A stretch of DNA of 64,000 nucleotides, from NCBI GenBank assembly GCA_964106645.2, contig OZ067042.1; one strand, given 5' to 3'. How positions within the stretch are numbered: position 1 is the stretch's first letter; every line of letters starts with the position of its first letter. Made by a program: the position numbers and the translations under genes. Positions 19,360 to 44,600 of this stretch are shown piece after piece. Under the pieces are notes generated by a model. The model was not told where the DNA came from, did not search any database, and saw only the letters and a program-made list of their open reading frames with translations. This DNA is from Podarcis pityusensis. Taxonomy: Eukaryota.

Positions 19360-19362
<3 letters not shown>

Positions 19363-19396
<34 letters not shown>
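19363..19396. repeat. (GT)17 microsatellite
   Basis: Direct read. Confidence 0.97.
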
Positions 19397-19399
<3 letters not shown>

Positions 19400-19584
19400 C
19401 ACATGCACAACACACATACACTGTCACACATGTATTCATATACCTATATATATATCTAGGTGGAGATAAGCATTTGGCATTTTTAGTAACAGCACATATA
19501 CCACAGTTTTATAGAACATATTGTGTCAGTCACTTCTCTCCTATCTTAGGCTTATGAAATCTATTTAAAATATATATTCTGCAG

Positions 19585-19951
19585 CAGGGGTGGAGAAACT
19601 TTGTTGGTTGGTGAGCCAGGTATCTTTGGCTGATGTGTGGGGCCACCCATCTGTAAATCATCTGATGTCATGATGATATCCAGTGACTGATAGGTGGGTG
19701 GGCATGCATGGGGGTGGGACAAAATAGCACCCAGTAGGATTGAATCCTCTGCTCACCAACTGATGAGCAAATGATTCAAAACTGCTGGTTGCAAGGGGTA
19801 TGCTTTGTCCCCAGCAGGATTGAATTGCACTCCCAGTCCATCAGCTGACATCACTCGTTAATGCCAGCTGATTGACAGGTGGGTGTAGGTTGGGGGAAAT
19901 GGACTTGTGTGCCAACTTGGACCCCTTGTGGGCCAGAGTTCCCCACCCTTG
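19585..19951. mobile_element. Degenerate hAT/Charlie-like non-autonomous element
   Basis: Ends CAGGGGTGGAGAAACT / AGTTCCCCACCCTTG; partial 8-bp TSD TTCTGCAG/TTCTACTG. Confidence 0.6.
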
Positions 19952-21298: not shown

Positions 21299-21738
21299 CA
21301 GGGACGTCCAACTCCCAATAGACTGCTATCTACTCACAGTATAAAAAACTGGCAGTGAGCTACCCATTGTCGTTTGATGGATCAATGTTGTTGAGCTTTT
21401 TTTTTAGGGAGCAAATGAATGAATGGAACAGAATATATGAATGAATGAAACTGAATGAGCATTGTGATATACACAGAACATAATAAAAAGTTGATTAAAT
21501 AAAACACACAGCTGAGGGTCCTGAATCCGCAGTCAAATAGTGGACCTTAATCTGATGGTCCACTTTTTTTGCTAGGAAGAAAAAGTTGCTGAGCTTTTTT
21601 TTGGAAAGGCAAAGTTGTTCAGCTTTTCTTAGGAAGCCAGAGTGGTTGAGCTTTTTTTAAATTCTTTTTGATTTTTTTATTTTGGGAGGAAGGAGATCCC
21701 TGAGAGACCAGAGATCTACCAGGAACACCCCGTGCCTG
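21299..21738. mobile_element. hAT-type non-autonomous element
   Basis: CAGG...CCTG termini with perfect 8-bp TSD TGCTAGAG; internal repeated GTTGAGCTTTTTT motifs. Confidence 0.8.
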
Positions 21739-22619
21739 TGCTAGAGGATCATGGAATCAGTTTTAATCAAGTGAAGGCTTTAAAGTGTTTTGTATTGGAT
21801 TTAATGAGTTTCTAATATATCATTGAGTGATTATCTCAGAGTCACCCCTGAAAAAGTATCCATCTTTAAGAGAGAAAGTTACAAAAATATTCCCAGGTTC
21901 CTTAGTTTAACTGAGCTGTACATGTTTTTCATTCCAGTTAACAGCCATTGAAATTTTGAAAGAAACCGCTTCTCTATAGCACTCAGAAACATCTCCACAA
22001 GGGAGCACAGTCTTTGACTGACTTTTAGCTTGTTTCACAACAAAGCATTGAATTCAAAGAGGCATTGGATTGAAGGTGGATGATAGGACCAAGGTTTTAA
22101 GATACTGACTTAAGAGAGATCTTTCTTCTGTATATAGTCAGAATCTAGTATATATTTTCTCCAAGATGATCTAAAAACTTTAAAATAGCCTGAGGTGAGA
22201 AACCTCTTCTTGTTCTAGGGTCCCCTGGAACTGGATAATGAGTTATATCCATACTCATTTACTCTGACTTTGACTAATTGGATATTGCCCAGTCTTTTTG
22301 ATATGTATTCATTTTTGTTCAAGTAATGTTTCTCAGCTTGCCTTTAAGACTTTACAGAACAGTGTATCTATTAATAGGCTGTGCATTTTTATATGGCATG
22401 AAAATTTTAACAGTTGTGGTTCATTTTTTTGAATGCAGGCCACATGGAAGTGGCAAAGAAAGAAGAATTCTAATGCATTGTGTTGATATATGTGCAGAAG
22501 TAGCATTAAATTGGCATGAACTATTTTTATATTTTTGTTTCCAGCCTTGAAACCAACTTCAGCCATTACTTTTCAAGTAAACTCAACTTTACATTTTCAC
22601 TTTATTTTACTTTTTCCAG

Positions 22620-22724
22620 TCAAAATGTTATGGCCAGAAACTGCTGACAGAAGTATTTAATCGGTTGAATTTGGTTGAATCGGACTACTTTGGAATTGAA
22701 TTCCAGAACATGCAGTCATATTGG
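22620..22724 (+). CDS. FARP2: FARP2 exon 3 (FERM F1)
   Basis: SKCYGQKLLTEVFNRLNLVESDYFGIEFQNMQSYW; ttccag| and |gtatgt; phase 0-0. Confidence 0.96.
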
Positions 22725-23329
22725 GTATGTAATATGTTTTTATCTGACTATAAACACCTTTAAATAGATGTGTTTTCAACTTTGTTTTTAAAGGAAGACA
22801 TTTGGTAGTTCTACTCTGGTTAAATTTGCACAAAAATTCCTTTAATGTAGGAGAAAGAGGATTATATTACAGGTAAGCAAAGCTGCACCATAGTGATGCA
22901 GCTGCAGTTGTTTCAAATAATAACCCTACACAGTTTTGTTGAATGCTCTTTTTTGGTCCTTCCATTTTTAAAACAAGCACTACCTACTTTGCTTATTATG
23001 GAGCTCTCTTAATTTGAGTGTTTAGTTCCTTTTCAATGAATTTTATTAGTTTTTGCTATGATTCAAACAGAACGATGTTTCAAGAAAAGACACCAAACCA
23101 CTTGATTAGCATTTTTAGAGTTGAAATGGAGTGCTGTATAAATTGGAATCTTGTTTCTACTGAGTAGCATTTGTACTGTATTTTTTGACATAGAATCAAG
23201 ATGTTGTGCTACAAGGGATAAAAGTAAAACGTAGATCAAACAAAGCTGTTTAGGAAGTCCATGACTGGGATCAAGTAATATAACCTTGAGCAATGAAACA
23301 GGCCTGACAATACCTATGACACAAATGGC

Positions 23330-24050
23330 ATAAGGCTTGATGTGAAGTCAACTAGACATGTGCTGGAGTGCACCATTGCACATGTTGTGTGTCAGTGAAG
23401 TTGCATGGACTACAGTGGCTATCCCAATCCATATACTGCCATAACTGGGTAAAGGCACTGCTAGCCACAGAATTCCCTTGGACCTCTAATGACAAAGGTT
23501 TATCTAAACTACATACCTGATTGTTCAGAGAGAGTGCAGTATCTTCAGGATGTAAGTACCTACCCACAGAGCCTCTTTCTTACCAGGTTTCAAACTCAGT
23601 TTGTTGGCCCTTATCCAGTCCACCACTGCATTCAGTCATAGATCCAGGACTTGCACAGCCTTACCTGATCCAGATGTTAAGGAGGTGTAGTAGATATAGA
23701 TGTTAAATAGCACTGGGGACCAAATTGTGCCTTGCAGAATCACATAACACAAGTGCAGGAGGCCATAGAACAGTGTTGTCCCACTGTTACACTCTGAACT
23801 CACCCACATAGGTAGTAACAGTGCTACTGTAATACATTGCCTCCTATACTGATCCTGAACAGTTGATGTAGGAAGATATGGTCAGTGGGGTCAAAAACCA
23901 CTGAGAGATCAAGTAATCGTAACAGTGTTGCATTTTCGCCGTCCCTCTTCTGAGGGTGACAAAGACTGATTCAATCATGAAACCAGGCCTGAACCCAGAT
24001 TGAACTGAATCTAGACATTCAGTGTACTCAAACAACACTTGCCTGATGTA
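23330..24050 (-). mobile_element. Degenerate L2-type LINE ORF2 fragment
   Basis: Minus-strand translation ..ECLDSVQSGFRPGFMIESVFVTL resembles the L2 RT motif LDPFQSGFRPGxxTETAL; broken frames. Confidence 0.7.
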
Positions 24051-24635
24051 CTTCATTTGATGGCAGAATTTGCATATTTAGATGTAGAGTTCTATCTAGA
24101 CCTTTGGCAAAAAAACTGTTTTTTTCTCTTATAAAAAAATATATTTGACATTATTTTTGAAGTTTGCATGAATAAATGCATTCATATACTTGAAAGGAAT
24201 TTCAAGTCATTCATTCTAATCTTTGCCCTCTAGCTTTATTATCTTGGGCAGATTTCATTCAGTCTCCTCACTGAAACCTCCAGAAAGAGTTGCCATAAGT
24301 TTCTTGGGCAAGGGACTTTGTTGCACAAGCATTAGTGTAAATGAATTTTCCTGTGATCCTTCCAAAAGGTGCTCTGCCATAACTAGAACTCAGTGCTTTT
24401 CCTTCATTCGCTTCAGGAAACTTTTTTCTTTCTGCAACTTTTTCCACTATATTTTTCACTGTCTATGTATAGACATTTTGAGGTTTATTCCTTTAGCTAA
24501 AACATTTGTTTAACTGAAATGGGGGTGTAGGGAAGTATTGGTTTACAGGTGCTAGAATTATTTTAGCTGTGTGGTTTTATTTACTGCTGCAGTGTTTGCT
24601 TAATTATTTACCTAAACCCTTTTTTCCTTGTTCAG

Positions 24636-24678
24636 ATTTGGCTTGAGCCTATGAAACCTATAATTAAACAAATACGAA
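24636..24678 (+). CDS. FARP2: FARP2 exon 4
   Basis: IWLEPMKPIIKQIR+1; ttcag| and |gtaagt. Confidence 0.96.
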
Positions 24679-25669
24679 GTAAGTATATATACTATTTATA
24701 TATACTATGCTACTTTATTAAGCTGGAATTTGATTGCCTGACTTTCCGCATCCTGGTACCCTCCAGAAGTTTTGGGCTACAGCTCTCATCATTCCCAGCT
24801 ATCATGGTCAATGGTGAAGATGATAGGAATTTCAGTCCAAGACATATGAAGGACACTGTAGGGGAAGACCGTTCTAGAGATTTGAAGCAAATGAAGATAA
24901 TCTGTTTCGCATGACACACAGGTTCACTTAATCAATGGAATTGGAGAACATTCATATGGAAAACACAAAAAATGAAGTTTTTTTTAAAGTAACTTTACAA
25001 AGTTACATTCCCACTGGGTCATTCAGCAATTCAAATGCTTTGTTTTTAGAAGGTTTTGTTAATTAGTTTTATCCTGCTTTTCTGTTTCAATAATAAAATG
25101 ACTTGTATAAAAAATAAAAATACAACAAAAGTAAACAAAACATTTTAAAATGCTTTAATTAACAGAGAATGCACCTGTTCCACTGTTCCACAGATAAACA
25201 TTTGTTTTCTGGCTGCAATTTCCTTAGAATTTGGATCACTTTAGGAGCTTCATGAGGTCCTATTTCAGTTTTTGATTATGCCAACTTCCCACATTCATTC
25301 AGACCATTTTACTGTTCTTTGATGTTCTTGTATTATTTTGGCTCCCAGTTTTGCCACAATCCCTTTAACCCCTTTCCTTCCACCATTTAGTAATTTTCAA
25401 CAGCTACCTACCACTGGCACTTTAGCTAGTATAGGTTCCTCTCCTGTATTTCAGATCTCTTGCTTAGGGTGTATATTACAACCATGTTTCAGAATTATGT
25501 TGGTATACTTGTTTGGTTGAGTTACTGTATTTAAGTTGAAATGTTCATGATCCATTCAATAAATGCCTAATTCCTATTACCTCACTTTTGAGAGTTGGCA
25601 ATTGGTATTCAAATTCAATGTTTCAACTATAAAGGTAAAAGTTAATAGAATGCATTGGTTTTATTTTAG

Positions 25670-25748
25670 GACCAAAGAATGCATTGCTTCGTCTAGCAGT
25701 AAAGTTTTTTCCTCCTGACCCTGGTCAGCTGCAAGAGGAGTACACCAG
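25670..25748 (+). CDS. FARP2: FARP2 exon 5
   Basis: (R)PKNALLRLAVKFFPPDPGQLQEEYT(R); ttttag| and |gtaaac. Confidence 0.96.
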
Positions 25749-27198
25749 GTAAACAATGTGGCACTATTAATTCCACAATAATTTACAATGGAAGTAGGAA
25801 AGAAGGATTAATGAATTATCTTTAAACTCAGAAGACCTGTGAATTCACTGCCAGAGTTGGTATGTGTGTGTAGCCTTGAATGACAGCAAGTTTTACCTGA
25901 TCTAATCAAGTGGCAGTGAAGCTGCTTCAGCTGTGTGCGAAGAGGATATACTTGCCAAGGATGTGTTCAAAATGTCCGTGTTTAAAAATTGTCTCAAGAG
26001 ATAAAGAACTTGCTTGGCTACTTGGTGCAGTGGTTTCAGGCTGTTATCCTGACCTGTGCATATTTACATGGGAGTAAAGCCCATTAAACACAACAGGTAC
26101 ACTGGTATGGTAGTTTACAAATACTGGGACTGGTTCTTCAGGGTAGCAAGACATATTTCTCTTAGTTGCCTTTGGATGTTATGAATTTCAGGATTGTTTA
26201 TCTGATATTTCTCATTCTGTTCCCAACTGCTGTGCCATTTGGTTGTGTTCTCTTGTGTGCATGCTTTGAGTTGAAAGTACATATGAATGGTGTCTCCTAT
26301 GTTCTTAATGAGTCTCATTGAAGTCTTCCTCTTGCAGATCTACTCAACTCTAGCCCTTACATACCTGTTTTTCTGCCAAATTGTGCCATTTGTGTTTCCT
26401 GTATTGTCTACTTCAGCCCACCTACATACCTTTCCATCAGTGATTCTGTGCTTGTCAGTTTTTCTATTCAGCTGTGACTTTTGAGTTTCTGCTAAAACTA
26501 CTTGCTGCCGTTTTCTGTTGTTTGCACTCCTCCTTTCCTAAATGACTGCCGTTGATGGCTGCAGGGTATACTGGATATGTTGCTATATTTGAAAAAGTAT
26601 CTATTTCATAGTTTCTCCTAAGTCATAGGAAATGGGTGAGGATGCATGTTCTATCATGCTCTGTGGAGGATTGTACCTGAAGAAATAATAGCATCACAAA
26701 ATTATTAAAATAGACTTTGAAAAACTTAAATATGTTGCTTAACTAGAAAGCTTTTGGGGGGCGGGGTTCTTCAGGACATGAGTCAGTCACAGGGAAGCTA
26801 GTAGGTAGAGAGGGTTGTGACAGTAGCAAGAGCTATAGCTGAACCTCACATTTGAACAAGTCTTAGCCACATTTGATACAAAGCCTGCCAGTCTTAGAGG
26901 TAGTGCAGTTGTATGTTGCTTGGTGACAGCATATATCTCGGCTAGCAACAGCTGGTGATCTGATGTGGTAGTAGTAAATACCTGTCACTAAGCAGGCTGG
27001 CGGTATGAGGGGGGAGGAGACAGTGCTATATTACTACTCTTAGTTATCACTCAGACATTGCCTTCAATGTTAGCATTGTGCATATATGCAGCTACTAACT
27101 GGCCTGTAGTACTCCTGCCTGGGCCATTTTTCATTTCCTGCTGCTAAACAGCTAGTAAAATGGACAAAATATGATACTATTGATTTCCCTCCCTTTAG

Positions 27199-27296
27199 GT
27201 ATCTATTTGCATTGCAAATCAAGAGAGATCTAGCTGAGGAACGCCTTACCTGCAACGACAATACAGCAGCACTCCTCATCTCTCACCTTCTGCAGT
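27199..27296 (+). CDS. FARP2: FARP2 exon 6 (FERM F2)
   Basis: [32 protein letters not shown]; tttag| and |gttagt. Confidence 0.96.
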
Positions 27297-28070
27297 GTTA
27301 GTATCTAATGTCACTTATATATTGAGCACACAGATGCAAGGAATCCATTCAGCTTCTCTACAGTTTCCTTCATCAGTAATTATTTTGCTTCTTTGTCATC
27401 CAGCAGTTACACCTTCCGTGGTTAGTTTCCTGCTTCTGTTATAGTTGCTCCCAGAAGCCATTTTTGATTAACATAATTGATTTGCACTTGTGTTGCTCAT
27501 TAACCATGCAAGCATCTACTTGGACTTTCTTGGGCTCTTTTGAATCTGATATAAATACCATTTACAAAGAGGGGGAAAACATAGGAGGCATACATTCTGT
27601 TTCAATATCTGTTATCATGCTTTCAGTAAGCCTTCATACATTCTGAATAATGTTCCCCTTTTCTGTCTTATCAGCTTGCTTTTAGAAGTTTAGTTTTTTA
27701 AAAAAGTTAAATGTGCCTATGTCGAATCTCCATGGGAACTTAACTACTCACACATATGTTGATTCTGATAGCACAGGAACATTGAATTTTCCCTTTTCCC
27801 GACACCCCTCCCCTCATGAAACAGATCCGTCTATTAGGTCTTACCAAAGTCCATTTTGTGAATCTGGTGGGTGCCAGTCATCAGGGTGATCATTTGAAAA
27901 CTTTATAAAGGGGTACCAAATCTCGTCATTTGCATCCCATATATACTATTGAGAACCAATGGTTATTGTAAGATGAAGATACCTTCACGGATCCATTTGC
28001 AAACTTTATGGAACAATTGCAATAGTGCAGCAATATTTTCTTTCAAATATATTTTTCTCTTCTATCACAG

Positions 28071-28185
28071 CTGAGTTAGGAGATTTTGATGAATCTGGGG
28101 ACCGAGAGCATCTTAAAAACAACCGGTACTTTCCAAACCAAGAAAGACTGCAAGGAAAAATACTTGAATTTCACAAGAAGCACAT
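28071..28185 (+). CDS. FARP2: FARP2 exon 7
   Basis: (S)ELGDFDESGDREHLKNNRYFPNQERLQGKILEFHKKH(M); cacag| and |gtaagt. Confidence 0.96.
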
Positions 28186-30627
28186 GTAAGTGTAAATGAA
28201 TGTTTAATTTCTGGTATTCAACATAGCACTATTTGCTGCTGCTATTGATAACAAAATAAGATTGTCTATATCTCTCATTAACCATAAGCTATTTCACCTA
28301 TACCTTCGTAGTAACGCTAGAAGGAGAATTTAGTTGTGTTGGCTAGGTGACCTGTTGGTCCTAAAAGCAAGAAAATTTGTTTGTGGCATGAAATTTGACT
28401 ATTATAATTTACTTGCAGAGTGGTATGATATGCCCAAATTTGAGAAGAATCCATTGACAAATGTCAGGACTACAAATCTTTAAAAATGTTGCTTTTAGAG
28501 GTTCCAAATTTCTGACCGTGTTCATGCACAGTGCAAACAAACATCTTAAATTCTTTCTTTTGATTGCTTAGACAGTGACAAAATCAAGGAAAAGACAGAA
28601 GTCTTCACCTCACTTTTCTTTTGAAAACCTTGTTTCTAAGTTCTATTTTTAAAAAGTAATTTAAATGCGAGGTTGTCCAGTACAAACTCCACGGGGCTTT
28701 TGAGTACAGAAGCAGAAAGGGGAAGTGCTAGCAAATCAGTACAGTATATGCTTGATTGGCAGGTAGACTTTCCACGGTGGAGTCTTGTCCCAAAGGTGAA
28801 ATATATCTCACTCCACTGAGTAGGTTTGCAGCAGAAGTTGTAAGTTAAGACTATAAGCTGGGCAGCTTTCCCTCAAAGTAGGAGTTTGGTGTTGGTCCAT
28901 TGATTTTCAGTGGGTCTACTCGGAGAATGACTTAGATGGATAGAATTGTTACATTTATTTAATACTCTTCCTTATTGTACAGCATAGTCTATTAGATGTG
29001 TGACTCTGAAACTGACCACATAATCATTTAATCTGCTCTTTTATTCTTACAATAGTATTTGAAGCTTTCTTGAATAGAAATGAAATTTAAGAAGAACCGA
29101 TTTCATGGGGTTTAAGCATAATGTTTTCCTCAATGTTTTCTCCTTTAATAGGATATCATTTTGAATCAAGATGGTGGAATAAACCTTTCAAAATAGCACT
29201 GATTTTAAACACGTATTTCAAAACTGCACTGATTTTTTTGTTTCTTAGAATTCCCAAACAATGGGTATGAGGCTGCTACATTATCATAATGGTCATTGAA
29301 AACAAACCTTAATCCAATTATCAGTGCAATTTAATGTATTTTGTTCTCTGTGCTTAACATAAAATATATTTTATTGTGGACACAGCACAGCAAAATTCTC
29401 TGTGTAAACAGGAGACTTCCAACTTCATGTTCCTCTTATAGTGCTAATGCAAAGGTTGAGCAATCAGCAGATGTGTAGCGTTCTCTGTGTGTTGATTCTT
29501 TCCTACAAACTAGATATTAAATCCCCCACAAGGCTAGGTTTCAGAACCATAAATGAGTCCTAACTAAGGGGAAAGTAACCCAGTGAGACAGCATTTGCAA
29601 CATATAATTAGTGTACATGTGAGGGGTTAACTACCCCTCCCTTCTACCAATTCTCTAAGAGTGTTCTCTACTCCATCACTATTTCGCCTGCCATTGGCAA
29701 GTATATGATTGGAACTATGTTTTTCAATCTTGCTTGGGCCTTATGAATGCCAATGTAGCAATTATACTTTGTTCACTTATGCAGTTTACAAATTAATGTA
29801 AAGTTATCCAAGTTAAAAGCAGCAGAATTGGCCAATTAACAATGCCTAATGGCCTTTCCAAAGTACTGTACAGTATCTTACCACATTTATGTCAGTTTGA
29901 CCCTAATTTATTGGTGAATATTGCAATTACGTTGAAATATTTATTGTCCGTGCAAGGTCATAACTTTTTTTAAAAAAAAACACCAAAAAATCCTAGAAAC
30001 AACTGCAGGAATATATTTATTGTTGAGAAAATTCTGTAAATTGGCTGTTCACTGGTTGTAGGATGGCTAAGCGGATTGATCTGCTTAGCAGATAACAAAA
30101 TTAGACCAGATTGTTTTCAGGCCAGTCTGTGAGGCTTAGTCGACTGAAAACATCTGAAGATAATTACTCACTGTGCTTTACCCTTGTAAACATTTGCTTG
30201 CATAGGGTAAATCACTTGGCATAATTACTGGTTTTTCTCACGTCAGAAATAAAGTATCTTCTGTAGGTGGAAAACTGAACGTTGATCAGTTTTTTTAGGC
30301 AAACATTTATTCAGGGTATTCTTCTGGTCACTAGAATAGCATAGAAATGTTGGCCATTTTAATCTGTAATAAATATATCTATAATCTGTGTGCATGAGCC
30401 TGTGGCTTACATGACCCCTTCTCCACTTTTGTGTGATGGAGGGAGGAGATACAGGGAGTAGAAGGCAACAAGCAATCTGTAACAGCCGTGACTGTTGATC
30501 CCCCAAACAGGCAGAGGAACCACAGCTTGGGAGGACTGTTTGCATTTTCAGGACTGCTACTACCCAAGGTGTTAGTGAATTGACCTAGCATGTTGCAGAG
30601 GGTCCTAACACCACTTGCACACAACTG

Positions 30628-30839
30628 TGGCACATCTACACCATACATTTAAAACACGATCAGCGCACATTTAAAGCATATCATGTCCCCCAAAGAATCC
30701 TGGGAATCAAAGTTTGTTAAAGGTGCTGGGAATTGTAGCTATGTGAGGGGGAAACTACTGTCCCCAGGATTCTTTGGATGAAATCATGCACTTTGACTGT
30801 GTGTTAGATATTCTTTAAATTCATAATGGGGATCTGCCC
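30628..30839. mobile_element. Old palindromic MITE (possibly PIF/Harbinger-like)
   Basis: Inverted ends GGCACATCTAC / GGGGATCTGCCC and internal inverted CCAAAGAATCCTGGG / CCCAGGATTCTTTGG. Confidence 0.55.
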
Positions 30840-31439
30840 TTGTACTAGGATAATACAGTTGTTCTCATTCAGAAGGCAGACTTAAGTGCAACTGTTAAGG
30901 ATTGACACCTATCAACTGCAGATAATGGGTGGGTGTGAGAACCACCAGGAGCCAGTTGTCTATATACAAAAACACAGTCAACTGATGCTATTGTAATGCA
31001 TCTGTCTTGAACATTGCAAAGCTGTTTGGGCTTGCCTGCTTACTGACTTGCTCTCATGTTTTCAAACAAAGAGAGATTAGATGTTGGCATATCTTTTACA
31101 AAATTATGGAATACGTAGCATTTTGCATTTAAAATTATGAAATACAGGGCATATTAAGGATACACTTGTTTTAAAGAATAATTAAATGTCTCTGAGTTTG
31201 ATTATGACTTCAACTAGATTGCCATTTGTTCTTCCATTTGTAACATATTTTTATGCTAGTTGATTTTTCTCTTTTGGTCTGGCACAGTAAACCTGAATAA
31301 CTCTGAAGCTTAGTGACTGCTTACTAATATGGATATGATCTCATTAAACTTGTTGAACTATATTGGAGTCTTTTTCCTGTTTCATATCTTTGGATAGTAT
31401 TATAAGTAATTAATAATATTTTCAATTTTGCTAACACAG

Positions 31440-31587
31440 GGGCCAAACTCCAGCTGAATCAGATTTCCAGGTGCTTGAAATAGCTCGCAAGTTGGAGATG
31501 TATGGCATGAGATTTCATCTGGCATCTGACCGTGAGGGAACAAAAATTAATTTGGCTGTATCAAACATGGGCGTACTGGTATTCCAG
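31440..31587 (+). CDS. FARP2: FARP2 exon 8
   Basis: [49 protein letters not shown]; cacag| and |gtagga. Confidence 0.97.
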
Positions 31588-32272
31588 GTAGGAAAGCAGT
31601 ATTTAACGTGAGAAACTTTTTGTAGTTATGCAGACAGAAGACTTTAAACCCAGAGGATAGACCCATATGCCTGCTTTAGAGCATGTAGCAATTGATTCTG
31701 AATGAATTGCTACCACATCCTTACTACAACAGTCTTTGCAGACCCAATAGACAATATGATGTTTGCAGATGCCTTTGTGGCAGCAGCACTCTTCATCAAA
31801 CCCAGATGGGATTAGTAGGGCTCCATTGCAGCAGCTTCTTCTTTGAGACTAATGGGAGCGTTTGTAATACTGCCTTCATTACGCTGGCTTGGGCTGATGG
31901 GAGTTGTAGTCCAAATGTAGTAGTAGTTCTAATAAATCTGTTACCCACCTTTCACCAGCAGGTCCTAGGGCGGGTTACAACAATTTAACTTTCAGAATTA
32001 AAAACAGTTAAAACAGGTTGCAATCACAGGAATAGTGTGGATCCTGAAAAGACCTATCTCAAATGTCAAAGGCCAGAGTAGCAAGGTCAGGGAGGGCTGC
32101 TTTCAGAACTAGAGGTTCTTTTAACAGCTTGTTGTTTTAAATTATCAGTTATCTGATCCAGACGATATGATTTAGATAGAAAAAAGGTTTGACAGTATAA
32201 GTCTATAACTTATGTTCTGTTTAAATCCTGTGTATAATATACCTCAGTTATTTTATATTGAATTGAACACAG

Positions 32273-32368
32273 GGTAATACAAAAATCAATACTTTCAACT
32301 GGTCCAAAGTCCGAAAAATAAGCTTCAAAAGAAAACGATTCCTTATCAAGCTTCATCCAGAAGTTCAT
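32273..32368 (+). CDS. FARP2: FARP2 exon 9 (FERM F3)
   Basis: [32 protein letters not shown]; cacag| and |gtaagt. Confidence 0.97.
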
Positions 32369-33420
32369 GTAAGTACTTCCATTATAATGTCACTTCTACA
32401 GTTTCAAGCATGACTTAAATATGAAATGACGTTCATACAGTATTCAGTACTGTTAATGCCTGAAAACAAGGTTCATAGGTAATAGCACTATGATAAAAGC
32501 ATGTTAGTAAAACCCGTATTCCATTAAAGTCTGAATTCTGACTTGTCTTTCAAAGGAGCCCATGTGGGCATCTGAAGGGGGGGGGAGTTTAAAAGGAGTC
32601 TTCACACTTGTAAAAGTTGGGAACCACTGCTCTAGAGCATGTTCTCGAGACCTACATTGAACCATGATATTAAAAAATATGCCCCTGGACCCTAGAATAT
32701 GTATTTTGTCTATTTTTGGGAAAGATGATGAGGATCTTATATGTAAACAGTTAATTGTATAATTTGTAGCCACTTGATTAGTTATTACACAGGAAAGATG
32801 CTTCATGATGTACCCTAGATAACTGGTTCAAGAAAGTTAACGTTCATTGCCATCTCAGAAAAAAATGATGGGATATTGAAGCCATTGAGAGTGATGTTGA
32901 TCCTTCTGATTTCACCTCTGGAGGTTATTTATGGAGGGAGGTTATTAGGTTGTTCTTGCTTTTATTTTGATTATGTATTCTGTGTTTTTATATTGTGACA
33001 TTATCCTGTGAACTGCCCTGAGACCTGCGGGTATAGGAATTACTATTATTATTGACATCCCAGTCACATGGGTTGCAAATCCCTTTGAAATACGATTTTA
33101 TTGGGTGGCTTCTATAGATAGGCACGACCTTTTTCTTTATTCCCATTTCCTTCATTGTACAATGTAAGTTGTGTTTTTCTACCCCATTTACAATTTTATA
33201 ATCGAATCCATTATATTCACTCCTGATTTTTTTCTTTTTCTTTTGACTTTATTATCAAAAGCTCCTTGTCTTGAATATATATTATTTGTTGTTATTTTTT
33301 GTTTTTCTCTTCACTTCTATCATCTATTTTTGTTGAATAAAGTTTTATTAAATATTTTCTCATTGTAACCTTAAATGTGTAGAGGTAGAATGATAAAGAC
33401 CCATTGTGTTTCATTTCTAG

Positions 33421-33584
33421 GGTCCATATCAAGACACTCTGGAGTTTCTGTTGGGAAGTAGAGATGAGTGCAAGAACTTCTGGAAAATATGTGTTGAATA
33501 TCACACTTTCTTCAGGCTATTTGATCAGCCAAAACCAAAGTCAAAAGCAGTCTTTTTCAGCAGAGGGTCATCTTTCAGATACAG
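33421..33584 (+). CDS. FARP2: FARP2 exon 10 (end of F3, FA domain)
   Basis: [54 protein letters not shown](S); tctag| and |gtatga. Confidence 0.97.
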
Positions 33585-33759
33585 GTATGATATAACCCAG
33601 TTCATTTTGATCCAAGAAAATGGAACCAAGAAAAACTTTGGAAGTAATTCCTTTTAAATTAAAGGTTTAGGATCTTTATTTCTTGAGTACAAGAAGCCCA
33701 GAATTTTATGTACTTTTCCTGGAGATTTTTTTGTAACATTCACATTTATTTCTTCACAG

Positions 33760-33828
33760 TGGGCGTACACAGAAACAATTGGTGGATTATGTTAAAGAAA
33801 GTGGGTTGAAAAAAATCCCATATGAAAG
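33760..33828 (+). CDS. FARP2: FARP2 exon 11 (FA)
   Basis: GRTQKQLVDYVKESGLKKIPYE(R); cacag| and |gtaaca. Confidence 0.96.
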
Positions 33829-34730
33829 GTAACAAGCTCTTTTATATAAGCAAAGAGTCTTTGATGTTCTTATTTTGTAACTTCCTTAGTCTAGTCTACA
33901 ATAATGAAAGGCCTTTTTTCCTAGAGATTGTAAACTGTTAAAGTATTATTTGACATTTTTATATTTCAAATTTAATTAATTAAAATGCTTAGATACTTGA
34001 CACTGGGAATTATGTTGAGTAGGAAGGAGCTGAAATTGACAAACCATTTAACATGTTTCAAATTCAGAAAAGTGATTTGATTGAATGGCATGAAAATATG
34101 TTGGCTTAAACTTCACTTTCCTTCACATAGTACCAACTGGAGACATGTAGTCTTTTTTTTTTTTGTTCCAATGTTGTAAACCATCTTGCATTTGCTCATT
34201 GTTATACTTACCGGATGGTATCCAGAGCTTCCCTTTTGCTGACAAAAAAGCATCCGTCAGCAGAACAGGGAGGGAGATGATTTCTGGTCATTCTTCTTCC
34301 ATTCTGCAGCCCCCTGCACACCCCAAAATTGGCTATTGAGAGTTTGGAGAGGTGTACCAGATCTTGAGAATCTGGACCACATGAATAAACATTTTAAGCA
34401 TTTTTTTGAATGTTAAAAATGTGTCCTATCCTGGATTTGTATTTTAGATATTTGTGTTGAAACTTACAGAATATGGAAATACATTTTTGCAGCTTTCCTC
34501 TTTCTCTAGTTAAAGTTATAATTCGCAGTCACTGTGTCTAACAGATACAATTATCCATGAATGACAAAATGCTGAGGCTCGTTGATTTATTACTATTAAT
34601 CTTTATCACACCTAGCAGCCTTATGAAGTAGGTTATGCTTCAGGAATTGCTTCTTACTGAAGGCCCCCTGTGCTTTCTGTATATAGCTAATGAAGTGATC
34701 AGGGTATCACAGCATATTCTTTCTTTACAG

Positions 34731-34788
34731 GAGGCATAGTAAAACTAGAATGTCTGCTCACACCTTGCATGCTGATACACCCAAACAG
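34731..34788 (+). CDS. FARP2: FARP2 exon 12
   Basis: RHSKTRMSAHTLHADTPKQ; ttacag| and |gttagt. Confidence 0.93.
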
Positions 34789-36120: not shown

Positions 36121-36373
36121 AGTGCCTCATTTACAGATGGATTAAGAACCTCTGGGCCTAATGCATGTACATATGCCTCCTTTCATTCGGATAATGCGTT
36201 AGCCACAAACATTGCCAGCTTGCCCACTTTCACAGAGAGCAAGCCTTTATTTTTGGAGCCCAGAATATCCCATACAAGGAGCTTGGCCGCGGACGCAAAT
36301 AGTGGGACATCAGAAGAAACTGGGAAGAAAGTGATACAGCAGCCTGGATCACCAGTACTCCAGTCATTCCAAG
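36121..36373 (+). CDS. FARP2: FARP2 exon 13, short form (linker)
   Basis: SASFTDGLRT...SPVLQSFQ+G; strong acceptor ctcctcag|; phase-1 donor AAG|gtgttg fits exon 14 but is weak, and stronger phase-1 donors lie downstream, so the 3' boundary is uncertain. Confidence 0.75.
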
Positions 36374-37344
36374 GTGTTGGGCTTTGTAAAGTTGCAGAAA
36401 ACTGCACCCCCACTTGTACTGATGTTGAGAGTAGCTGTGGTTTAGGTGTAGCAGTAGAAGGTAGGATTACTTGTAAAAATGACAATTACGTGGATGACTT
36501 TACCACAGGTATGGCCATTGCTGCTAAACAGCATCTGCCTCAAGGTAGGGGTGCCTCACTTGTAAAACTGGTTAGCTCCCAGCTTCAGGTTTCAGAAGAG
36601 TTCATTGATGATGATCCAGCAGAAATGTCCTTTTTTGCTGGAGGTTCTGAAGCATTTTCCTATTTGTATGATGGTTTAGATTTGCAGGAGTCAGATCTAA
36701 CTAATTGTCTCTCAGAGTCACCTGCTTTAACTAAAGAAATTCTGCAAAGAAATATGATGTCTTCTCAGTCAAGTCCTGATAGGTGCTCCATAGAAGCAGT
36801 AGATATGAACATGGACCATGAGTTTGAATTTGAAGGAGAGAGTGATTTTAATGGGAATGAACAGCCTTCAGATACCTCGGAATTATTTGAAGTTAAAGCT
36901 CAGGCAAGCAGAATGCAAAGTCTTCTGAGTCCTTCTGAAACTAGTTCATTAATTAACAACCGTTCTGAAAGTAGTTCTCTCAACAATTTGACACTAAATG
37001 GTATGCCATTTTTGCACACTTATAGCTCTGCTAATCACTCTGAAGCTAGTTCAATGGTGAATTTTCCAGCATATTCAGTTCGCTCTGAGTCAAGTTCAGC
37101 TTTTCAGTTCACTGACATTATTGACCAGTTGGAACAGCTGAGCTATCCACCTACCACTACAGAAGACTCTAGTAGCACTGATGACTCATGGGATTCAGAA
37201 ACTGCAGCCCCATTAGACATAAACCTCTTTTTCAACAACCCCTTTGCTGAGGCTACTAGAGAGAATTTCACTCTTGATTTTCAGAATAATCTTAAGAATC
37301 TCACCCAGGAAGATAAAACAGAAGACACACACACAAGCCATTAA
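36374..37344 (+). CDS. FARP2: Putative FARP2 exon 13 read-through / alternative terminal coding segment (323-aa acidic Ser-rich tail)
   Basis: Exon 13 frame continues stop-free to TAA 37342-37344 in AT-rich DNA; protein-like composition with internal motif repeats; no TE hallmarks. Confidence 0.8.
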
Positions 37345-37800
37345 TATTTTGGTTGATATTACGTAAATTTATGCTTTCAGGAATCTGGTTTTGAAAGAGA
37401 AAAGATAATGTAGATTGTTTCTGACCTGGTTCATTCTAGTGATTGGATTTCAAATTTATGTCCTTTTTAAAAATCCTTATCCCAATTTTTCTCAAGCCAT
37501 CATAAATTAGTTGCTACTTTGAAGTGTAGATGTCAGTGGTGCAGACTAGCCATTATAATTTTTCTAATGTATTGTACTATGCATTTTTTATCACCCAGCA
37601 ATTGTTTAAACCATCTGTGGTGAAGGTCACTGCATCACTGAATTTTGAACTTAGGTACACTTTGCAAATAACAGACCCTCTACAAAGCATCGCTGCTGAT
37701 GAGCAGTAAATGTCTTGAAAGGCCATTGGCATATTTTGTGCTTCCTTGTTGGTGCTTTGTTAGAATTTTAACACATTACTCTGCAGAAACAAGCCTATAA

Positions 37801-37922
37801 CATGGATAGGGAACCTGTGGTCCTCCATATGCAGTTGGACTACAAATCACATCATGCATGGCTATTGGCCTTGGGAAATAGAGTGGAACAGCATCTGGAG
37901 GGCCACAGATTCCTCACCCCTG
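37801..37922. mobile_element. Short hairpin hAT-like MITE (related copies near 1810-1940, 24750-24875, 42555-42682, 61645-61770)
   Basis: Inverted GGAACCTGTGGTCCTCCA / TGGAGGGCCACAGATTCC arms and the shared GGACTACAA core. Confidence 0.6.
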
Positions 37923-38623
37923 CTGTAACTTAACTGAATCAATATGAAAGGTTTGCTTGAGCTTTTATTTGAAGATGGTACTACTTCAAGGAAATGATCT
38001 TATTATTGTTAGACTATGAATATACAAGTGGTATTGAAAGACTATATTATGGCAGTAAGAGAGTTGGCAAACCTGGTTCTCTCAGGTCTCCTGATAGACA
38101 CTGAAGAATGTATTTAAGTTGCAAAGCAGGAAAGCAAACCTTGTACAGGAAATAAACTAAAATACTGTTAGGGCTGTGTCTGAAAGGATTATATCTTGAG
38201 TTAATTAAATAGGCTTGTGTATCTTTCCATTATAATTTCCTAATTATGCCTGTGTGAAAGGGAAGATTGTGCAATATATGAACTTCACCAGATTTTCGGT
38301 GGTGGTGGTGGTGGAGAACCAGGCACATCTGGTTTCTATACTCTGTGATAATTGTGTTTTCACTGTGGATTTCCTATCATACTTTAAAAAACCACTTTCA
38401 TAATCGTCCTGACCAAATTCTTATTAGACTGATTTTATCAGTGTGCAGCTCAGCATAATGGAGCGATTGCCTTCGGGCTGCCAATTAGTTTGCTTTTTGT
38501 TCTGAAAGATTCACTTTCACTAGTAGTTTATCATACCTGTAGTGATATGCTCCATGTGCCTGAAATTGTTAAATCAGCAAGAATTTATACTAGTTGTGGT
38601 AGTAGCACATTAAATAATACATA

Positions 38624-38829
38624 CAGTAAACCTGCAACTTAACCCGGGGGTTACGTTCCAAGGATCGCGCCTGAAGCCAAATCACATAAAGGCAAAACAC
38701 ACTGGGTTCAAATGCGGGTGGGATTGCCAAAGTCTTTTCCCCAGGACATCCCTTCCATTTTTAAAAAAGTGTTGTTGTTGTTTTGGCCAAACACATAAAG
38801 CTGGATGTGCACAAGTTGCTGGCTTACTG
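38624..38829. mobile_element. Tc1/mariner (Tigger-like) MITE
   Basis: TIR CAGTAAACCTGCAACTT / AAGTTGCTGGCTTACTG, TA on both flanks. Confidence 0.8.
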
Positions 38830-41634
38830 TACCATGGAATGCAATCTTTAGATGTCAGATTTTTTTAAAATCAGACATCTCTGCCCCTCTACTTTTTCAG
38901 AGAAGTACCAGGACTCTGTAGGGCCAGGTTGTGCTTCATGTGGGTATGTGGAGAATATCTGCAAATATTCTACATTTAACTTTGATTTTAAGTATTGCTA
39001 AGTAAAGCTATGTCGGTGATGCCATAAAGTTATATTACTAGATTAAAGGGTTTTTTCCCACTTTTGCCAACCATAATTCAGAAAGGACTTTGCTTAAGTA
39101 AGATTTTAAAGTTAAGAATACATGCACCTTTGCTGATACAGGCTAGGAGTTCTAAAATTAGATATTGGTCATGATCAATGACTGGTGGTACATGCTGAGA
39201 TTGTACAAATAACTTCGGTTAGTAAATGGTAATGTGAGGTAATTGTATTTCTTCTCAGAAACAAATCTATGGCAATCCACTTCTGAACTCTTGGCACAGT
39301 ACAGCTAATTTCCTGTTAAAGCTTCTTATTGAATAGGTCAGTTCAGTTACTAAAATCAAACAACCTTTTCTTTTCCATTTGGAGCATTGCACAACACCCA
39401 TATTTTATTCAAAACCATCATAATTAAATACAAGATTGGTCAAATGCAGTTGCATTTTCTAGATGTGCCTGTTAACTTCCCCAGAGGCTTTTCTAGTAGC
39501 TGTTGTTCATAAATATGTTGTATGTTTTGAAATTAAGTAAAATATTCAGGATTTGTTTGGATTCCATGCCCTTCTGTTTTGTAAGTACTTGTAGGGTACT
39601 TCCCTATGAACATCTAACATTTTTTTAAAAAATAATATTTTTTAACATCATAGTTTTTCTGTTTTAAACACATTAAATTGCCTTCATTCCCAATATGAGA
39701 TTGTTCCTGAACTCTCAAACTTTTTAGGTAAGTCTGAACCTGTTATTTATTCTTAGTGAAATATAGTTAAAAATAAATTTCACAATACCATACTCAGCTT
39801 CTGTTTATCTCCAAGCTGTGAAGTTATGGACTGACAAGGTTATGTTGATTGAAGTTGGGACTGATATGCATAGCAGAAAAGAAATGTGTTGGATCAGCTG
39901 GTTAGTTTCCAGTGGTGTGGTGCTTTTTTTAAAGAATTCAGAATGTGGACAATGGAGGGCTGATCGAGAAGTTGTAAGGAACCAGAGATTTGCTCTGCCT
40001 CTTGATTGCAGACCTCACGGAAGACCTTGGGCTTTGTGTGTAGAAAGATTTCCCTTTTTATTATACTCCATGGGGAGATCTGTTTTGTTCAGTATTAAAC
40101 CATCTATGCTACAGAAGATGAACATTTTTGTTCACCCTAGTCATATCTTGTGATATTGTTAATTTTGCTAGTTTTATTATTATTTTTACTGTTCTGCTCA
40201 TTTCCCACTTCTCTTAGTACAAACCTAGTTGTTGGTAGAAAAACTTGCCTAGAATTCCAGTTTTTAAAATAAATGTGCATGTGTGTTGCAGATTATAGTA
40301 AGTAGCAGCTGATTGCCTCGGGGTCAACAGGCAGGTGGGGAGCAAATTCACAAAGTGAATGTTCCTCTGACATTAAGATACATTAGGGGAAATCAAAAAT
40401 CTGTACATAATAGGTAGCTTTTTTCATAGTTGCAGAAGCATCCATGCAAGTGAGTTTGCTCCATTGTACACTGATAAAGTATTTGACTGCACTTTATGGT
40501 ACATGGGTATGTAGTATTAAATACTTCAGATTTTAATCAGATATACTCAAAGCATTCTTTACTGACATTATTATAGGTTTATAATCATTCTGCATTTAAA
40601 CATATTTATTTTGACCCAATTAAAAATAAAGGATGAGTTGATTGATGGAATACGGTTGAATGCTGTAGCTTGACAAACATATACAGTTAAGCTTTGGCAG
40701 AACTGTCTACACATAATTTATAATGTTGTATCAGTTGTAGAATTAAGTATATAATTTGCTATTAAAGCAATTTCTTTTTCTAATAATTATTTACCACTTG
40801 ACTTGAGTAGTGACATGCTTATTTTGCAATCTGGTTCACTTTTAAATTCAGTTTACTAACCTTAAAAGATTAATGAAATTCCTATCAGATATATTCTTAT
40901 GGATGGTATGTGTGTTAAGCCTTTAGAAGAGCATTAATTAAAAACCTGTTGGTAATTCATTCCCATTATTGTCATTTTGCCGAGTCTTAAGCTTTCAGGT
41001 ATTACATGCAATAGTTAGGCTTTCATTGCAAATGTCTCAGTACTGATTCTCACAATGGTCGCTTATCTTTAATATTCAACTCCCCACCCAATTAATGCAG
41101 TATATATACTTGTATGCACATGCAGAATAAATTAATATTGTGAGTTTTTTGCAGCTCTTCACACGTAACTTCAGCTCCAGCTAAATATTTTACTCCTTGT
41201 TTGTGAAATTTTAGGGGGTTCATCCACTTAATGAAGAATTTGATTTTCAATGGTTCATCAGTACTTAAAATTGGTATGAGTGAGATCATAAGAAACCGTT
41301 TGGCATATTTAGGGCAAGTCATAGCTTTAGTATGTGGAGCACATAAAAATACAGACTCTCTGTATTGGCAACTGACTGCAAAGGTTCAGAACATACTGGA
41401 CATACATATAGTAAAGCTTTATGCTTCAAATGATTTGTGCCTTAGTATGATCCGTTTCTTAGTACAATTGATACATATTCAGGAAAAAATACATTTATTG
41501 GACTGGAAATTCTTACTACAACTTTTTGATCATGATCATTTTATACTCCAGATGTTTGTTTTATACTTTTTGTTTTCTGTTGAAATTATTGATGATATAT
41601 CTACAAATTTGTACTAATTTGAAATTGTTTATGC

Positions 41635-41640
41635 AATAAA
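41635..41640 (+). terminator. Candidate intronic polyadenylation signal for the read-through isoform
   Basis: AATAAA with upstream TGTA (41610-41613) and downstream GGTTTTGTTTT; other AATAAA occur at 38151, 39772, 40268, 40625, 41126. Confidence 0.4.
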
Positions 41641-44600
41641 ATGAGGAAGTCTTTGATATGAATGATAAATTTTACCTTTCATTAATGGTTTTGTTTTTAA
41701 AAAAGGCTTACTATTTTATTTTGTAAGGCTGACTTACTTTAGAAGTGTAGTAGCTCTTTATAATGCAACAATTTATTCTGGAATACAAAAGCAAATTTAT
41801 CTTGAACCATTTTTACTCTGTTCTTTCTTTAAAAGAAGCTGGCCATGATCATAAGTTGTTGTTTTAGTCTTACATATTCTATGAAAATCTATAGTATAAA
41901 TTATATACACAAACACAAGTAAAAATCTACTTAGCTTATTTCAGGCAGATTAGTCCGAGAAGCTCACCAACATTTAACTTACGGGATAGGCCACGAAATA
42001 TCTAAGTAGCCTATGCAGATTAAGGAGTTCTACATACCCAGATATTTTATGGTCTCTCTTGTTTAAAACTACTCTTTCATTATCCATACTTGATTAGCAT
42101 TTTTGTTTGAAAATATTGCTTTAATTTGCACAGTGAACTACATACAGCTGGACCCCTTACGTACAAGAAACCACCTGGGATTTGGGATCAAAAATCCTCA
42201 AAACTTGCTATAAAAAAGTATTTCTTCAACAATTTTGACATTTTCATATCTTTCTCATTTCTTTGTTTTACAACGCAGGCTGTAACACTTTAGTACTATT
42301 CTACAGACAGAAAGTTCCTACCACACACATTCAAGTGCCCTGTGTCCCGCTATTTAGTACTTGATAGTCAAGCACTGTTGGCACTCGGTTGTGAGCTCAG
42401 CACATTCCCAGTTGGCTGAAATTTTGACACCAGTATTAACATTTCCCTCTTTCCTAGCAATATTGATATCTTCAAATAGCCAGTCAATTTTTCCTCTGTG
42501 CTGGTGTCACTGAGGGCAGATTACAATAATTCATAATACGGGTAATGCCTACTTGTAGGGGTTGGGGCACCTGCTTTCCTCCAGAAATTGTTGGAGTTAG
42601 AGCTCCCATCATGGCCAATGACCAAGGTTGATGGAAATTTTATTCCCACAACATCCGGAGGGCCACGAGTTCCCCACCACTGGTTATTCGGAGGCACTGG
42701 CCCTCAGTTTGAATTAGCATTGTTTTCCATCAGTGATTCCCAAGCCAAATATAGCTACCAGTTTTGTAGTTGAAGAGGATCATTTTTCTAACAGTTCAAA
42801 TTTAAGTAAAATGCATCCTGATGTAGGAAACAGTATATTGACACAGTGGTAGAACTTCTTATTTAAATAGTGCTTACTATACTACCTGGAAATATGATTC
42901 CTCAGAAGGTTAATCCTTAGGAGTAAAGCTGATGCACTGGATGCAACTGTACTGTAATGGCAATCGTATTATCAAGAGCCCTTTTATTTTCAGACACAGA
43001 ATGTAAAAGAGGTTCATCATATTTTGGGAAAGGAAATACACCCTACCTTCTCATTATAATCTTAAGTTCCATTTTAAAATGCTATTTGGGAGTGTTAATA
43101 ACCTCTTTGAGAGTATGTGTGCTTTTGGTATCGTGCTATGGAACCATACAGAGAATTGTGTTCTGTAAATATGAATGCACAGAACCAGTTCTTTAACTAT
43201 CATTGCAGGTAAGTAAAATATGCATCTTAGAACACATGGCATGGGTAAAAATGCTATTTCAGTTTACTAGTGTGCAAACACTTCATGAGCATATACTGCT
43301 TAGGGGTGAGAGCAGAAGATGTTACAATTCCTCTTTTTTCTTTTTTTCTTTTTTGCTAAAGACAGCAAGATCTGGGAGTTTCCTTACTTGGTATCTGTGT
43401 TGCACTTGCAGATATGCTATTTACTTTTGTCTCTGTGCAACCATGAATTCCTTCTTTTGTACTTGTCTATACCTGTAGCAGTTATAGAAAAGGAAGACAT
43501 GAGGCAAAGAATGAATTGCTTTTCTTTAAAGGCCTCAGCCTCTTATAGGAAGGGGCTACGGCATCAAGGTTTATTTACAGCTTGAAGTAGTAAATTCTGT
43601 TCTTACAATAGGGTCATGGAGAGGAGGAATAATGGCAATGAGTCTTTTTCAATGGGGTATTCTGTTTTAGAGGGGTTATAGAATCCTATTTTGATTACTC
43701 ATGTCAAAAGGTTGAACAGCTTGTAGAAAATAGATTTCTGTTCAAAATAGTGCAAGAAACATGTCCTAAAAATCAGACTCTTCGGATATTCAGGAGACAT
43801 TTTTTCATATCTGCAATTTTTTGGGGTTTTTTTAATGGTATTAAACCGTGTGTGGGATTGGAATGCTAGCCTGTTGTATTTTTTGAGAAGCTGTCACATT
43901 TCTTTTTGAAAGAAGATATTGTATATATACAATAGACAGCTACCCAACCCTCAGTTTTCAGAGGCAAGTAAAGACTGGGTGCATCATTTATGGAGCCATG
44001 GTGTAAGCACATTGGGGACTTGCTCGGTTTTCAGAAGTCGTTTTGAATAAATCACAAATCTACTTTTGCTAAGTTGTGCACTCTTTGAAGGTTCTAGCCT
44101 TCATTCATTCACATAAGTAGGATCAGGTCTGAAACTATTGTGAAATCTTATCCATAGTGTCTGCTGCCATTTTATTTCATGCATACTAATATCAGCTAAG
44201 TGTATAGCGTCTTTTTAAAAACAAAGCCTGGCTTACTGTAACTTGTAATGTGTTTATACAACTTGTCAATGCATCAGTGTCCAACAGAAAGGCTGATGGC
44301 TACAAACCTTTTGTAGAAGTCATACTTTTAATATACATAAATAAGAGTTTGAGGAGTTTAACATCTGATTGCTGTAGAATGAGGGGTGGGGGTGGAAGTA
44401 CAAATGGATTTTTATGCATTATTGTGACCTGTACTAATGTATGTATTAATAAATGTAGAATGTAAATTGTCTGCAGTACTACTGAAACTCACCTGCTTTC
44501 AAGAAAATCAGTTTACTTAGCAGTAGTTTGACTTCTAATTTTTCAAATTAGGAAATGCTTGTTGGATGTAGATTTTCAAAAGACACGACACTTGAGGACA

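What the first reader, a model, noticed from the sequence alone, without database searches (positions are those of the whole stretch)
36121..37344. Hidden GEF-less FARP2 isoform: exon 13 read-through adds a 323-aa acidic tail
Seen: past the weak donor at 36373 the frame stays open for 971 more nt to TAA 37344. This is the longest ORF in the window, in AT-rich DNA and in frame with FARP2. Exons 2-12 (393 aa) plus the extended exon (407 aa) give an 800-aa protein: FERM + FA + an acidic, Ser-rich, probably disordered tail, with no DH/PH. Established: FRMD7, the closest FARP relative, has a FERM-FA-long tail layout with no GEF module. Inference: this locus makes a second, FRMD7-like product that could compete for FERM partners such as plexin-A without GEF output. 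I know of no characterised equivalent, though automated annotations may list it.
Basis: partly seen in the sequence, partly recalled or inferred. Interest (0 to 1): 0.88.

Follow-up and report, generated by a model that had tools for sequence, protein, structure and literature searches.

The report
Ancient short FARP2 form resembling FRMD7
A lizard gene for the cell-shape signalling protein FARP2 makes, in about half its transcripts, a second form that drops the Rho-activating half and ends in an acidic tail kept from sharks to mice; the sister gene FARP1 has a related hidden tail that links both to the nystagmus gene FRMD7.

Summary
Confirmed and extended. Exon 13 (36121) reads through its weak donor (36373) to TAA 37344, giving 393+407=800 aa. 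Stranded RNA of a close relative shows both forms, with the tail at about half the depth of exon 13 and intron 12 empty. A polyA element at 41559-41669 matches the 3' ends of bird and guinea-pig transcripts. The tail is under purifying selection (omega 0.20) and occurs from chimaera to mouse.

It is not hidden from databases: TrEMBL lists it (Podarcis A0A670JHQ2, mouse D3Z4C0). I found no paper on it. A characterised analogue exists: C. elegans FRM-3A, made the same way, works as a GEF-less synaptic scaffold.

New here: FARP1 gene models carry a matching read-through tail. It is homologous to the FARP2 tail at one end and to the FRMD7 C-terminus at the other, and nine FRMD7 exons match FARP2 exons in length and phase. 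FRMD7 is therefore probably the frozen short isoform of the ancestral FARP gene.

A scaffold role is more likely than pure competition. Protein-level expression and function are untested. The scan had not noted this elsewhere.

The parts
8366..34788 (+). FARP2 coding exons 2-12 (8366-8569, 22620-22724, 24636-24678, 25670-25748, 27199-27296, 28071-28185, 31440-31587, 32273-32368, 33421-33584, 33760-33828, 34731-34788): N-terminus, FERM and FA domains, 393 aa, shared by both isoforms
   Evidence: exon 12-13 joint in reads
36121..36373 (+). Exon 13, part shared by both isoforms (253 nt; starts in phase 0, ends in phase 1)
36371..36379 (+). Weak internal donor AAG|GTGTTG. Used: GEF isoform. Skipped: short isoform. 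A similar weak donor is kept in a second squamate, bird, mouse, guinea pig, pig and a shark-like contig
36374..37344 (+). Read-through coding extension, 323-aa acidic Ser-rich tail and TAA
36583..36651 (+). Conserved block 1 (EEFIDDDP...SFF.GG; residues 548-570 of the 800-aa form), also present in the FARP1 tail
   Evidence: 61 of 62 sequences
36877..36927 (+). Predicted helix, residues 646-662 (absent in teleosts)
36931..37182 (+). Most conserved block: about four SE.SS-type Ser repeats, an amphipathic acidic helix (residues 723-733, 37108-37140) and YPPTT
37237..37245 (+). NPF tripeptide (NPF in 36 of 62, NP[F/L] or TP[F/L] in 53 of 62 sequences); possible EH-domain ligand, inference only
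37345..41669 (+). About 4.3 kb 3' UTR of the short isoform; RNA coverage shown to 40550, the rest inferred
41559..41669 (+). Conserved intronic polyadenylation element: upstream TGTA, AATAAA at 41635-41640, inferred cleavage near 41660-41670
   Evidence: matches the 3' ends of L001 (with poly-A run) and L010
47511..47674 (+). Exon 14, first exon specific to the canonical DH-PH-PH isoform (further exons from about 49290 to the window end)

Best explanation
Shown: FARP2 exon 13 is a composite terminal exon. If the weak donor at 36373 is used, the transcript splices to exon 14 and makes the canonical FERM-FA-DH-PH-PH protein. If it is skipped, the transcript runs on, stops translation at 37344 and, by homology with bird and guinea-pig transcripts, is cleaved at a conserved intronic polyA site near 41660. 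The product is an 800-aa FERM-FA protein with a disordered acidic tail carrying short conserved motifs. Inferred (evolution): this two-way switch predates the FARP1/FARP2/FRMD7 split; FARP1 keeps it and FRMD7 is the copy that kept only the short form. Inferred (function): the short form is a GEF-independent membrane scaffold. FERM-FA docks on lipids and on adhesion or guidance receptors and binds partners such as CASK or aPKC, while the tail motifs recruit further partners or control localisation, probably under Ser phosphorylation. The splice-versus-polyA choice would set the ratio of scaffold to GEF in each tissue.
For: Both joints and continuous stranded coverage in RNA, intron 12 empty. 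Spliced transcript contigs encoding the whole short form in mouse, guinea pig, pig, galliform, squamate, frog and a shark-like species; no exon-14+ sequence in the two tested. Conserved polyA block. Omega 0.20. FARP1-clade proteins with the same phase-1 internal donor and a homologous tail. FRMD7 exon lengths and phases match. FRM-3A and FERM-FA alone rescue GABA-A receptor clustering (PMC7260190). FRMD7 binds CASK through FA (PMC3633374). FARP2 FERM-FA binds aPKC (PMC6503954).
Against: No protein-level detection. The lizard 3' end itself was not covered by reads. The FARP2 and FRMD7 tails show no direct similarity. The FARP1 tail rests on genome annotations and conservation, not on RNA. No partner of any tail motif is known. 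In the worm FERM-FA alone rescues, so the tail's role is open there too. Homology of the worm switch to the vertebrate one was not tested.
Confidence: 0.6

Rival explanations
1. Natural dominant-negative: the short form occupies plexin-A, SynCAM, aPKC or lipid sites and blocks GEF output of full-length FARP2.
For: It keeps the whole FERM-FA module that binds plexins, lipids and aPKC (PMC6041286; PMC6503954). Both forms occur in the same samples at about equal level. FRMD7 N-terminal fragments act dominant-negatively (PMC3633374).
Against: Competition needs no 323-aa tail, yet its motifs are nearly invariant over about 450 million years. The worm short form and full-length FRMD7 have positive functions.
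Confidence: 0.2
2. GEF-free Rac activator: like FRMD7, the short form needs FERM and tail together to bind RhoGDI and release Rac1.
For: FRMD7 does this and needs both its FERM domain and its C-terminus (PMC3742540). The architecture is shared.
Against: The block FRMD7 shares with FARP1 is only weakly recognisable in FARP2. It rests on one paper.
Confidence: 0.1
3. The tail is conserved mainly as an insert in a long tail-plus-GEF protein (about 1350 aa) made through a second, distal donor; the GEF-less form is a by-product.
For: 47 database proteins join tail sequence to exon 14, many from turtles and birds at one point after the NPF motif. A GT donor is present there in the galliform and guinea-pig contigs.
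Against: All 47 are genome-annotation or aggregate-database entries, none a Logan transcript protein, and their junctions vary. The window has AGA GAG at that point, and two other squamate contigs and mouse also lack the GT. The polyA element and the last ~30 residues beyond that point are conserved.
Confidence: 0.06
4. Intron retention or a regulatory dead-end transcript: no stable protein is made.
For: Coverage past the stop runs at least 3.2 kb, and the lizard end was not seen directly.
Against: Omega 0.20 with an intact frame from chimaera to mouse. A polyadenylated spliced contig exists (L001). A terminal exon has no downstream junction to trigger decay.
Confidence: 0.04

Closest known systems
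Automated entries for the same isoform: Podarcis muralis A0A670JHQ2 (800 aa), mouse D3Z4C0 (795 aa), Callorhinchus A0A4W3IKM1 and V9KF42 (800-801 aa)
   Same: Same FERM-FA-tail product; the Podarcis entry is 99% identical over exon 13.
   Different: Database entries only; no paper found on them or on this isoform.
C. elegans FRM-3A / FRM-3B (frm-3, the FARP orthologue)
   Same: The GEF form arises by splicing inside the last exon of the GEF-less form; the short form is FERM-FA plus an unrecognised tail and is functional (PMC7260190).
   Different: Invertebrate; homology of tail sequence and donor position not tested here.
FRMD7
   Same: FERM-FA-tail with no GEF; nine exons of identical length and phase; a large phase-0 terminal exon in the position of FARP exon 13; its C-terminal block matches the FARP1 tail.
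   Different: A separate gene with one architecture; no direct tail similarity to FARP2; the exon before the tail is 76 nt against 58 nt.
Intronic-polyadenylation isoforms with a composite terminal exon (e.g. secreted IgM, soluble receptor forms; from general knowledge)
   Same: A weak donor competes with a downstream intronic polyA site.
   Different: Here the added sequence is 323 aa with deeply conserved motifs and a 4.3 kb UTR, not a short truncation tag.

Membership tests
Composite terminal exon (intronic polyadenylation isoform) | Internal donor used in other transcripts | tested here: met
   11 and 5 reads join 36373 to exon 14 in X24 and X21
Composite terminal exon (intronic polyadenylation isoform) | Spliced, same-strand RNA continues past the donor | tested here: met
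   Depth 5-20 to 40550, intron 12 zero apart from one short contig overhang, stranded
Composite terminal exon (intronic polyadenylation isoform) | PolyA site inside the intron | tested here: met
   Conserved block 41559-41669 matches the ends of L001 (with poly-A run) and L010; met by homology, the lizard end was not covered by reads
Composite terminal exon (intronic polyadenylation isoform) | Transcript lacks downstream exons | tested here: met
   No exon-14+ match in L001 or L003
FARP2 (orthologue) | FERM-FA falls in the FARP2 clade; DH-PH-PH exons lie downstream | tested here: met
   Tree with the 99%-identical Podarcis entry, clade support 99/96; downstream exons
Protein-coding sequence | Purifying selection and intact frame | tested here: met
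   Pairwise dN/dS 0.20-0.29 for unsaturated pairs; GY model omega 0.20 against 0.06 for FERM
Protein-coding sequence | Peptide or ribosome evidence | not testable with these tools
   No proteomic or ribosome data available
FRMD7 | FERM-FA plus long tail, no GEF; same exon plan | tested here: met
FRMD7 | Falls in the FRMD7 clade | tested here: not met
   FRMD7 is a separate clade, 100/99
FRMD7 | Tail sequence directly homologous to the FRMD7 C-terminal region | tested here: not met
   hhalign 0.2%; HMM at most 7.6 bits, below the 9.7-bit control maximum; link only through FARP1
FRMD7 | Binds CASK or RhoGDI | not testable with these tools
   Literature for FRMD7 only
ERM-type head-to-tail autoinhibition | Tail folds onto its own FERM domain | tested here: inconclusive
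   Tail helices score pLDDT 66 and 55 with FERM against 72 and 69-74 alone: no gain; contacts not available

The most novel reading that the evidence does not exclude
The ancestral FARP gene carried a splice-versus-polyA switch between a GEF and a GEF-less scaffold, perhaps shared with the worm frm-3 switch. FARP1 and FARP2 still run it, and FRMD7 is the duplicate frozen in the short state. Unstudied short FARP1/FARP2 proteins could then cover for FRMD7 outside the oculomotor circuit, and could account for GEF-independent FARP phenotypes.
Probability: 0.45. Interest if true: 0.8.

Novelty: new variant of a known kind. Interest (0 to 1): 0.66.

Why it matters
The FARP papers I read treat FARP1 and FARP2 as FERM-GEF proteins. 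If a large share of transcripts makes a GEF-less protein, then knockdowns, knockouts and antibodies aimed at the N-terminal or the C-terminal half report on different molecules.

[quoted passage not shown] The FARP1 tail match contradicts that and points to a conserved block worth testing in nystagmus truncations, which are most frequent in exon 12 (PMC12811896).

That paper also asks why FRMD7 loss spares most of the brain and suggests FARP redundancy. The short isoforms make this directly testable.

Tried and rejected
Chance ORF: rejected. Genomic DNA or pre-mRNA as the source of coverage: rejected, intron 12 empty and reads stranded.

Pfam, PDB sequence and ESM Atlas searches with the tail gave nothing usable. 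P0128, a repeat protein with a calpain-inhibitor hit, shares only the short acidic helix and is treated as a motif likeness. P0176, named FARP1 in Ophiophagus, matches this FARP2 locus at 76% in exon 13 and looks misnamed.

My first FRMD7 profile wrongly included P0375, a FARP1 protein; only the clean rerun is used for FRMD7 scores. One search timed out. The 128-aa ORF at 41231-41617 in the UTR is not conserved. Fold searches were not run because the tail model is low-confidence.

Operator rules followed: the spliced model was checked exon by exon and never joined or searched as one sequence; the natural Podarcis entry P0162 stood in for folding. The cluster of P0129 listed a human-labelled partial record and probably human contig proteins, and one search returned human FRMD7. 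These were excluded from all later comparisons, so the human state was not examined. The N run in L002 was left as X.

Full report
Observation. The frame 36121-37344 holds 407 codons and TAA and is the longest stop-free frame in the window (421 codons; next 291). About 6e-6 are expected by chance. Boundary calling guided by tblastn gave eleven upstream coding exons with canonical sites and consistent phases, 1179 nt or 393 aa in all. Exon 13 starts in phase 0 at 36121, so the read-through product is 800 aa. The internal donor at 36373 is the weakest of 13 scored, 4 of 9 consensus positions. The tail is 14.6% Ser with net charge -38. The window is a lacertid lizard: exon 13 is 99% identical to a Podarcis muralis entry. 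I checked exons one by one and did not join or search the spliced model.

Expression. Stranded RNA-seq from a close relative shows zero read depth in intron 12, 14-20 on exon 13, and 5-20 across the tail and on to the limit of the test at 40550, on the + strand. Exon 12 joins 36121 (14 and 7 reads). Loose ends after 36375 match exon 14 at 47511 (11 reads in X24, 5 in X21), so the donor is real and both forms exist. Contig depth in X1 drops from 165 to 80 at the donor, about half. At 36390, X23 keeps 15 of 17 reads of depth while X24 keeps 2 of 13, which hints at sample-dependent ratios, but the counts are small. Whole spliced contigs encoding the short form exist for mouse (89 index blocks), guinea pig, pig, a galliform, a squamate, a frog and a shark-like species (species of unnamed contigs inferred from cluster mates or from the tree).

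The 3' end. The guinea-pig contig L001 ends in AATAAA and a poly-A run and holds no exon-14+ sequence. Its end and that of the galliform contig L010 align to window 41559-41669 at 72-75% identity, with an upstream TGTA and AATAAA at 41635. The short form is therefore a composite terminal exon with a UTR of about 4.3 kb. In the lizard this end is inferred: contig 7 of X1 extends about 930 nt beyond 40547, to roughly 180 nt short of it.

Conservation. The tail is found in geckos (79%), birds (73-74%), mammals (45-62%), coelacanth (51%), frogs (about 50%), bichir and teleosts (36-39%), chimaera and stingray. Many entries are FERM+FA+tail proteins of 690-830 aa, among them mouse D3Z4C0 and Podarcis A0A670JHQ2. 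dN/dS is 0.20-0.29 in unsaturated pairs and 0.20 in a codon model, against 0.06 for the FERM region. A weak donor is kept at the same place in all but the frog contig, partly through coding constraint. Conservation is blocky: residues 548-570 and 698-747 are 78-95% conserved, with spacers near 20-30%. AlphaFold2 folds the FERM domain and leaves the tail disordered except for helices 646-662 and 723-733, which gain no confidence when FERM is present. This pattern fits short binding motifs in a disordered chain (inference).

Paralogues. A FERM-FA tree places gecko P0375, paddlefish P0308, carp P0317, Umbra P0310 and Albula P0314 in the FARP1 clade (99/97). They lack the GEF and continue from the point where canonical FARP1 splices. 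In the paddlefish locus L002, exon 13 starts in phase 0, has a phase-1 donor (CAG|GTCCAG at 22574), reads through as one ORF, and exon 14 lies at about 29760. Gecko and paddlefish tails are 43% identical. With a clean FRMD7 set, the FARP1 tail matches the FARP2 tail at the first block (hhalign 95.3%, E 2e-8; HMM 42 bits against a control maximum of 6.0). It matches the FRMD7 tail at the C-terminal block (96.7%, E 4e-10; 54 bits against 9.7). FARP2 against FRMD7 directly gives 0.2%. A bird FRMD7 locus has exons of 105, 43, 79, 98, 115, 148, 96, 164 and 69 nt with the same phases as FARP2 exons 3-11, then 76 nt against 58, then a 1026-nt phase-0 terminal exon. The simplest reading is one ancestral read-through exon, kept as an option in FARP1 and FARP2 and as the only ending in FRMD7. 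Limits: the two matches involve different blocks, the FARP1 set is five proteins plus one ORF from the same paddlefish locus, no RNA was tested for it, and the tree has no outgroup.

A possible third form. 47 database proteins join tail sequence to exon 14. All are genome-annotation or aggregate-database entries rather than transcript-contig proteins, and their junctions vary, so many are likely projection artefacts. The recurring turtle and bird junction has a GT in the galliform contig but not in this window. It is unresolved elsewhere and not applicable here.

Mechanism. In C. elegans, frm-3b is made by splicing within the last frm-3a exon, and FRM-3A or FERM-FA alone restores GABA-A receptor clustering; FRM-3 recruits LIN-2/CASK (PMC7260190). 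FRMD7 binds CASK through FA, and its tail region keeps it cytoplasmic (PMC3633374). It is also reported to activate Rac1 through RhoGDI (PMC3742540). FARP FERM-FA binds lipids, SynCAM, plexins and aPKC (PMC6041286; PMC6503954). I therefore rank a positive, GEF-independent scaffold first (0.6), competition second (0.2), RhoGDI release third (0.1); these can coexist. That the isoform is real and coding I put at about 0.95.

Prior knowledge. Ten literature searches found no description of this vertebrate isoform or of the FARP1-FRMD7 tail link; the library lacks most subscription papers. The known 'short FARP1' mention concerns exons 2-3 (PMC7507005). Human-labelled records appeared and were not compared further.

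Verdict. Real, ancient, auto-annotated but apparently unstudied: a new variant of a known kind. The added value is the conserved polyA switch and the link to FRMD7 through FARP1. Interest 0.66.

Noticed in passing
window 59223-59384 and 60004-60093: One stretch of the PH1-PH2 region of FARP2 proteins hits both places, as expected for duplicated alternative exons; the scan has a separate note on this.
   Followed up: no
window 60624-61000: GC-rich 59-nt tandem repeat, 6.4 copies, 95% matches, in an intron; it explains the overlapping long ORFs at 60380-61248.
   Followed up: partly
window 37800-37930 and about 38620-38740: Short repeat-like stretches in the short isoform's UTR that attract reads and contigs from other loci (loose ends).
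   Followed up: no
window 40904-41662; 40942-40980: UTR segments conserved with another lizard (65% over 805 nt) and a 39-nt block 97% identical to the galliform contig: possible regulatory elements.
   Followed up: no
window 41231-41617: 128-aa ORF in the UTR; interrupted by stops in L022, so probably chance.
   Followed up: yes
L002 22310-23700: Paddlefish FARP1 tail: similarity to the gecko C-terminus appears to continue past the annotated stop in another frame, suggesting a frameshift or assembly error; an N run lies at 23011-23061.
   Followed up: partly
P0375, P0482, P0317 C-termini: FARP1 short forms of gecko and carp end in a conserved VF.C motif, possibly a PDZ ligand; inference only.
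   Followed up: no
window 37108-37146: The acidic amphipathic helix has the hydrophobic spacing of LD-type or nuclear-export motifs, and resembles the repeat of P0128, which has a calpain-inhibitor Pfam hit.
   Followed up: partly
L003-L007 3' ends: Five mouse contigs stop at the same base, 3939 nt after the stop, with no polyA signal; probably an assembly break.
   Followed up: no
window 47511: Lizard exon 14 starts about five codons later than in turtle and bird models.
   Followed up: no
window 3001-5000: GC-rich island (0.52-0.61), likely the FARP2 promoter and non-coding exon 1.
   Followed up: no
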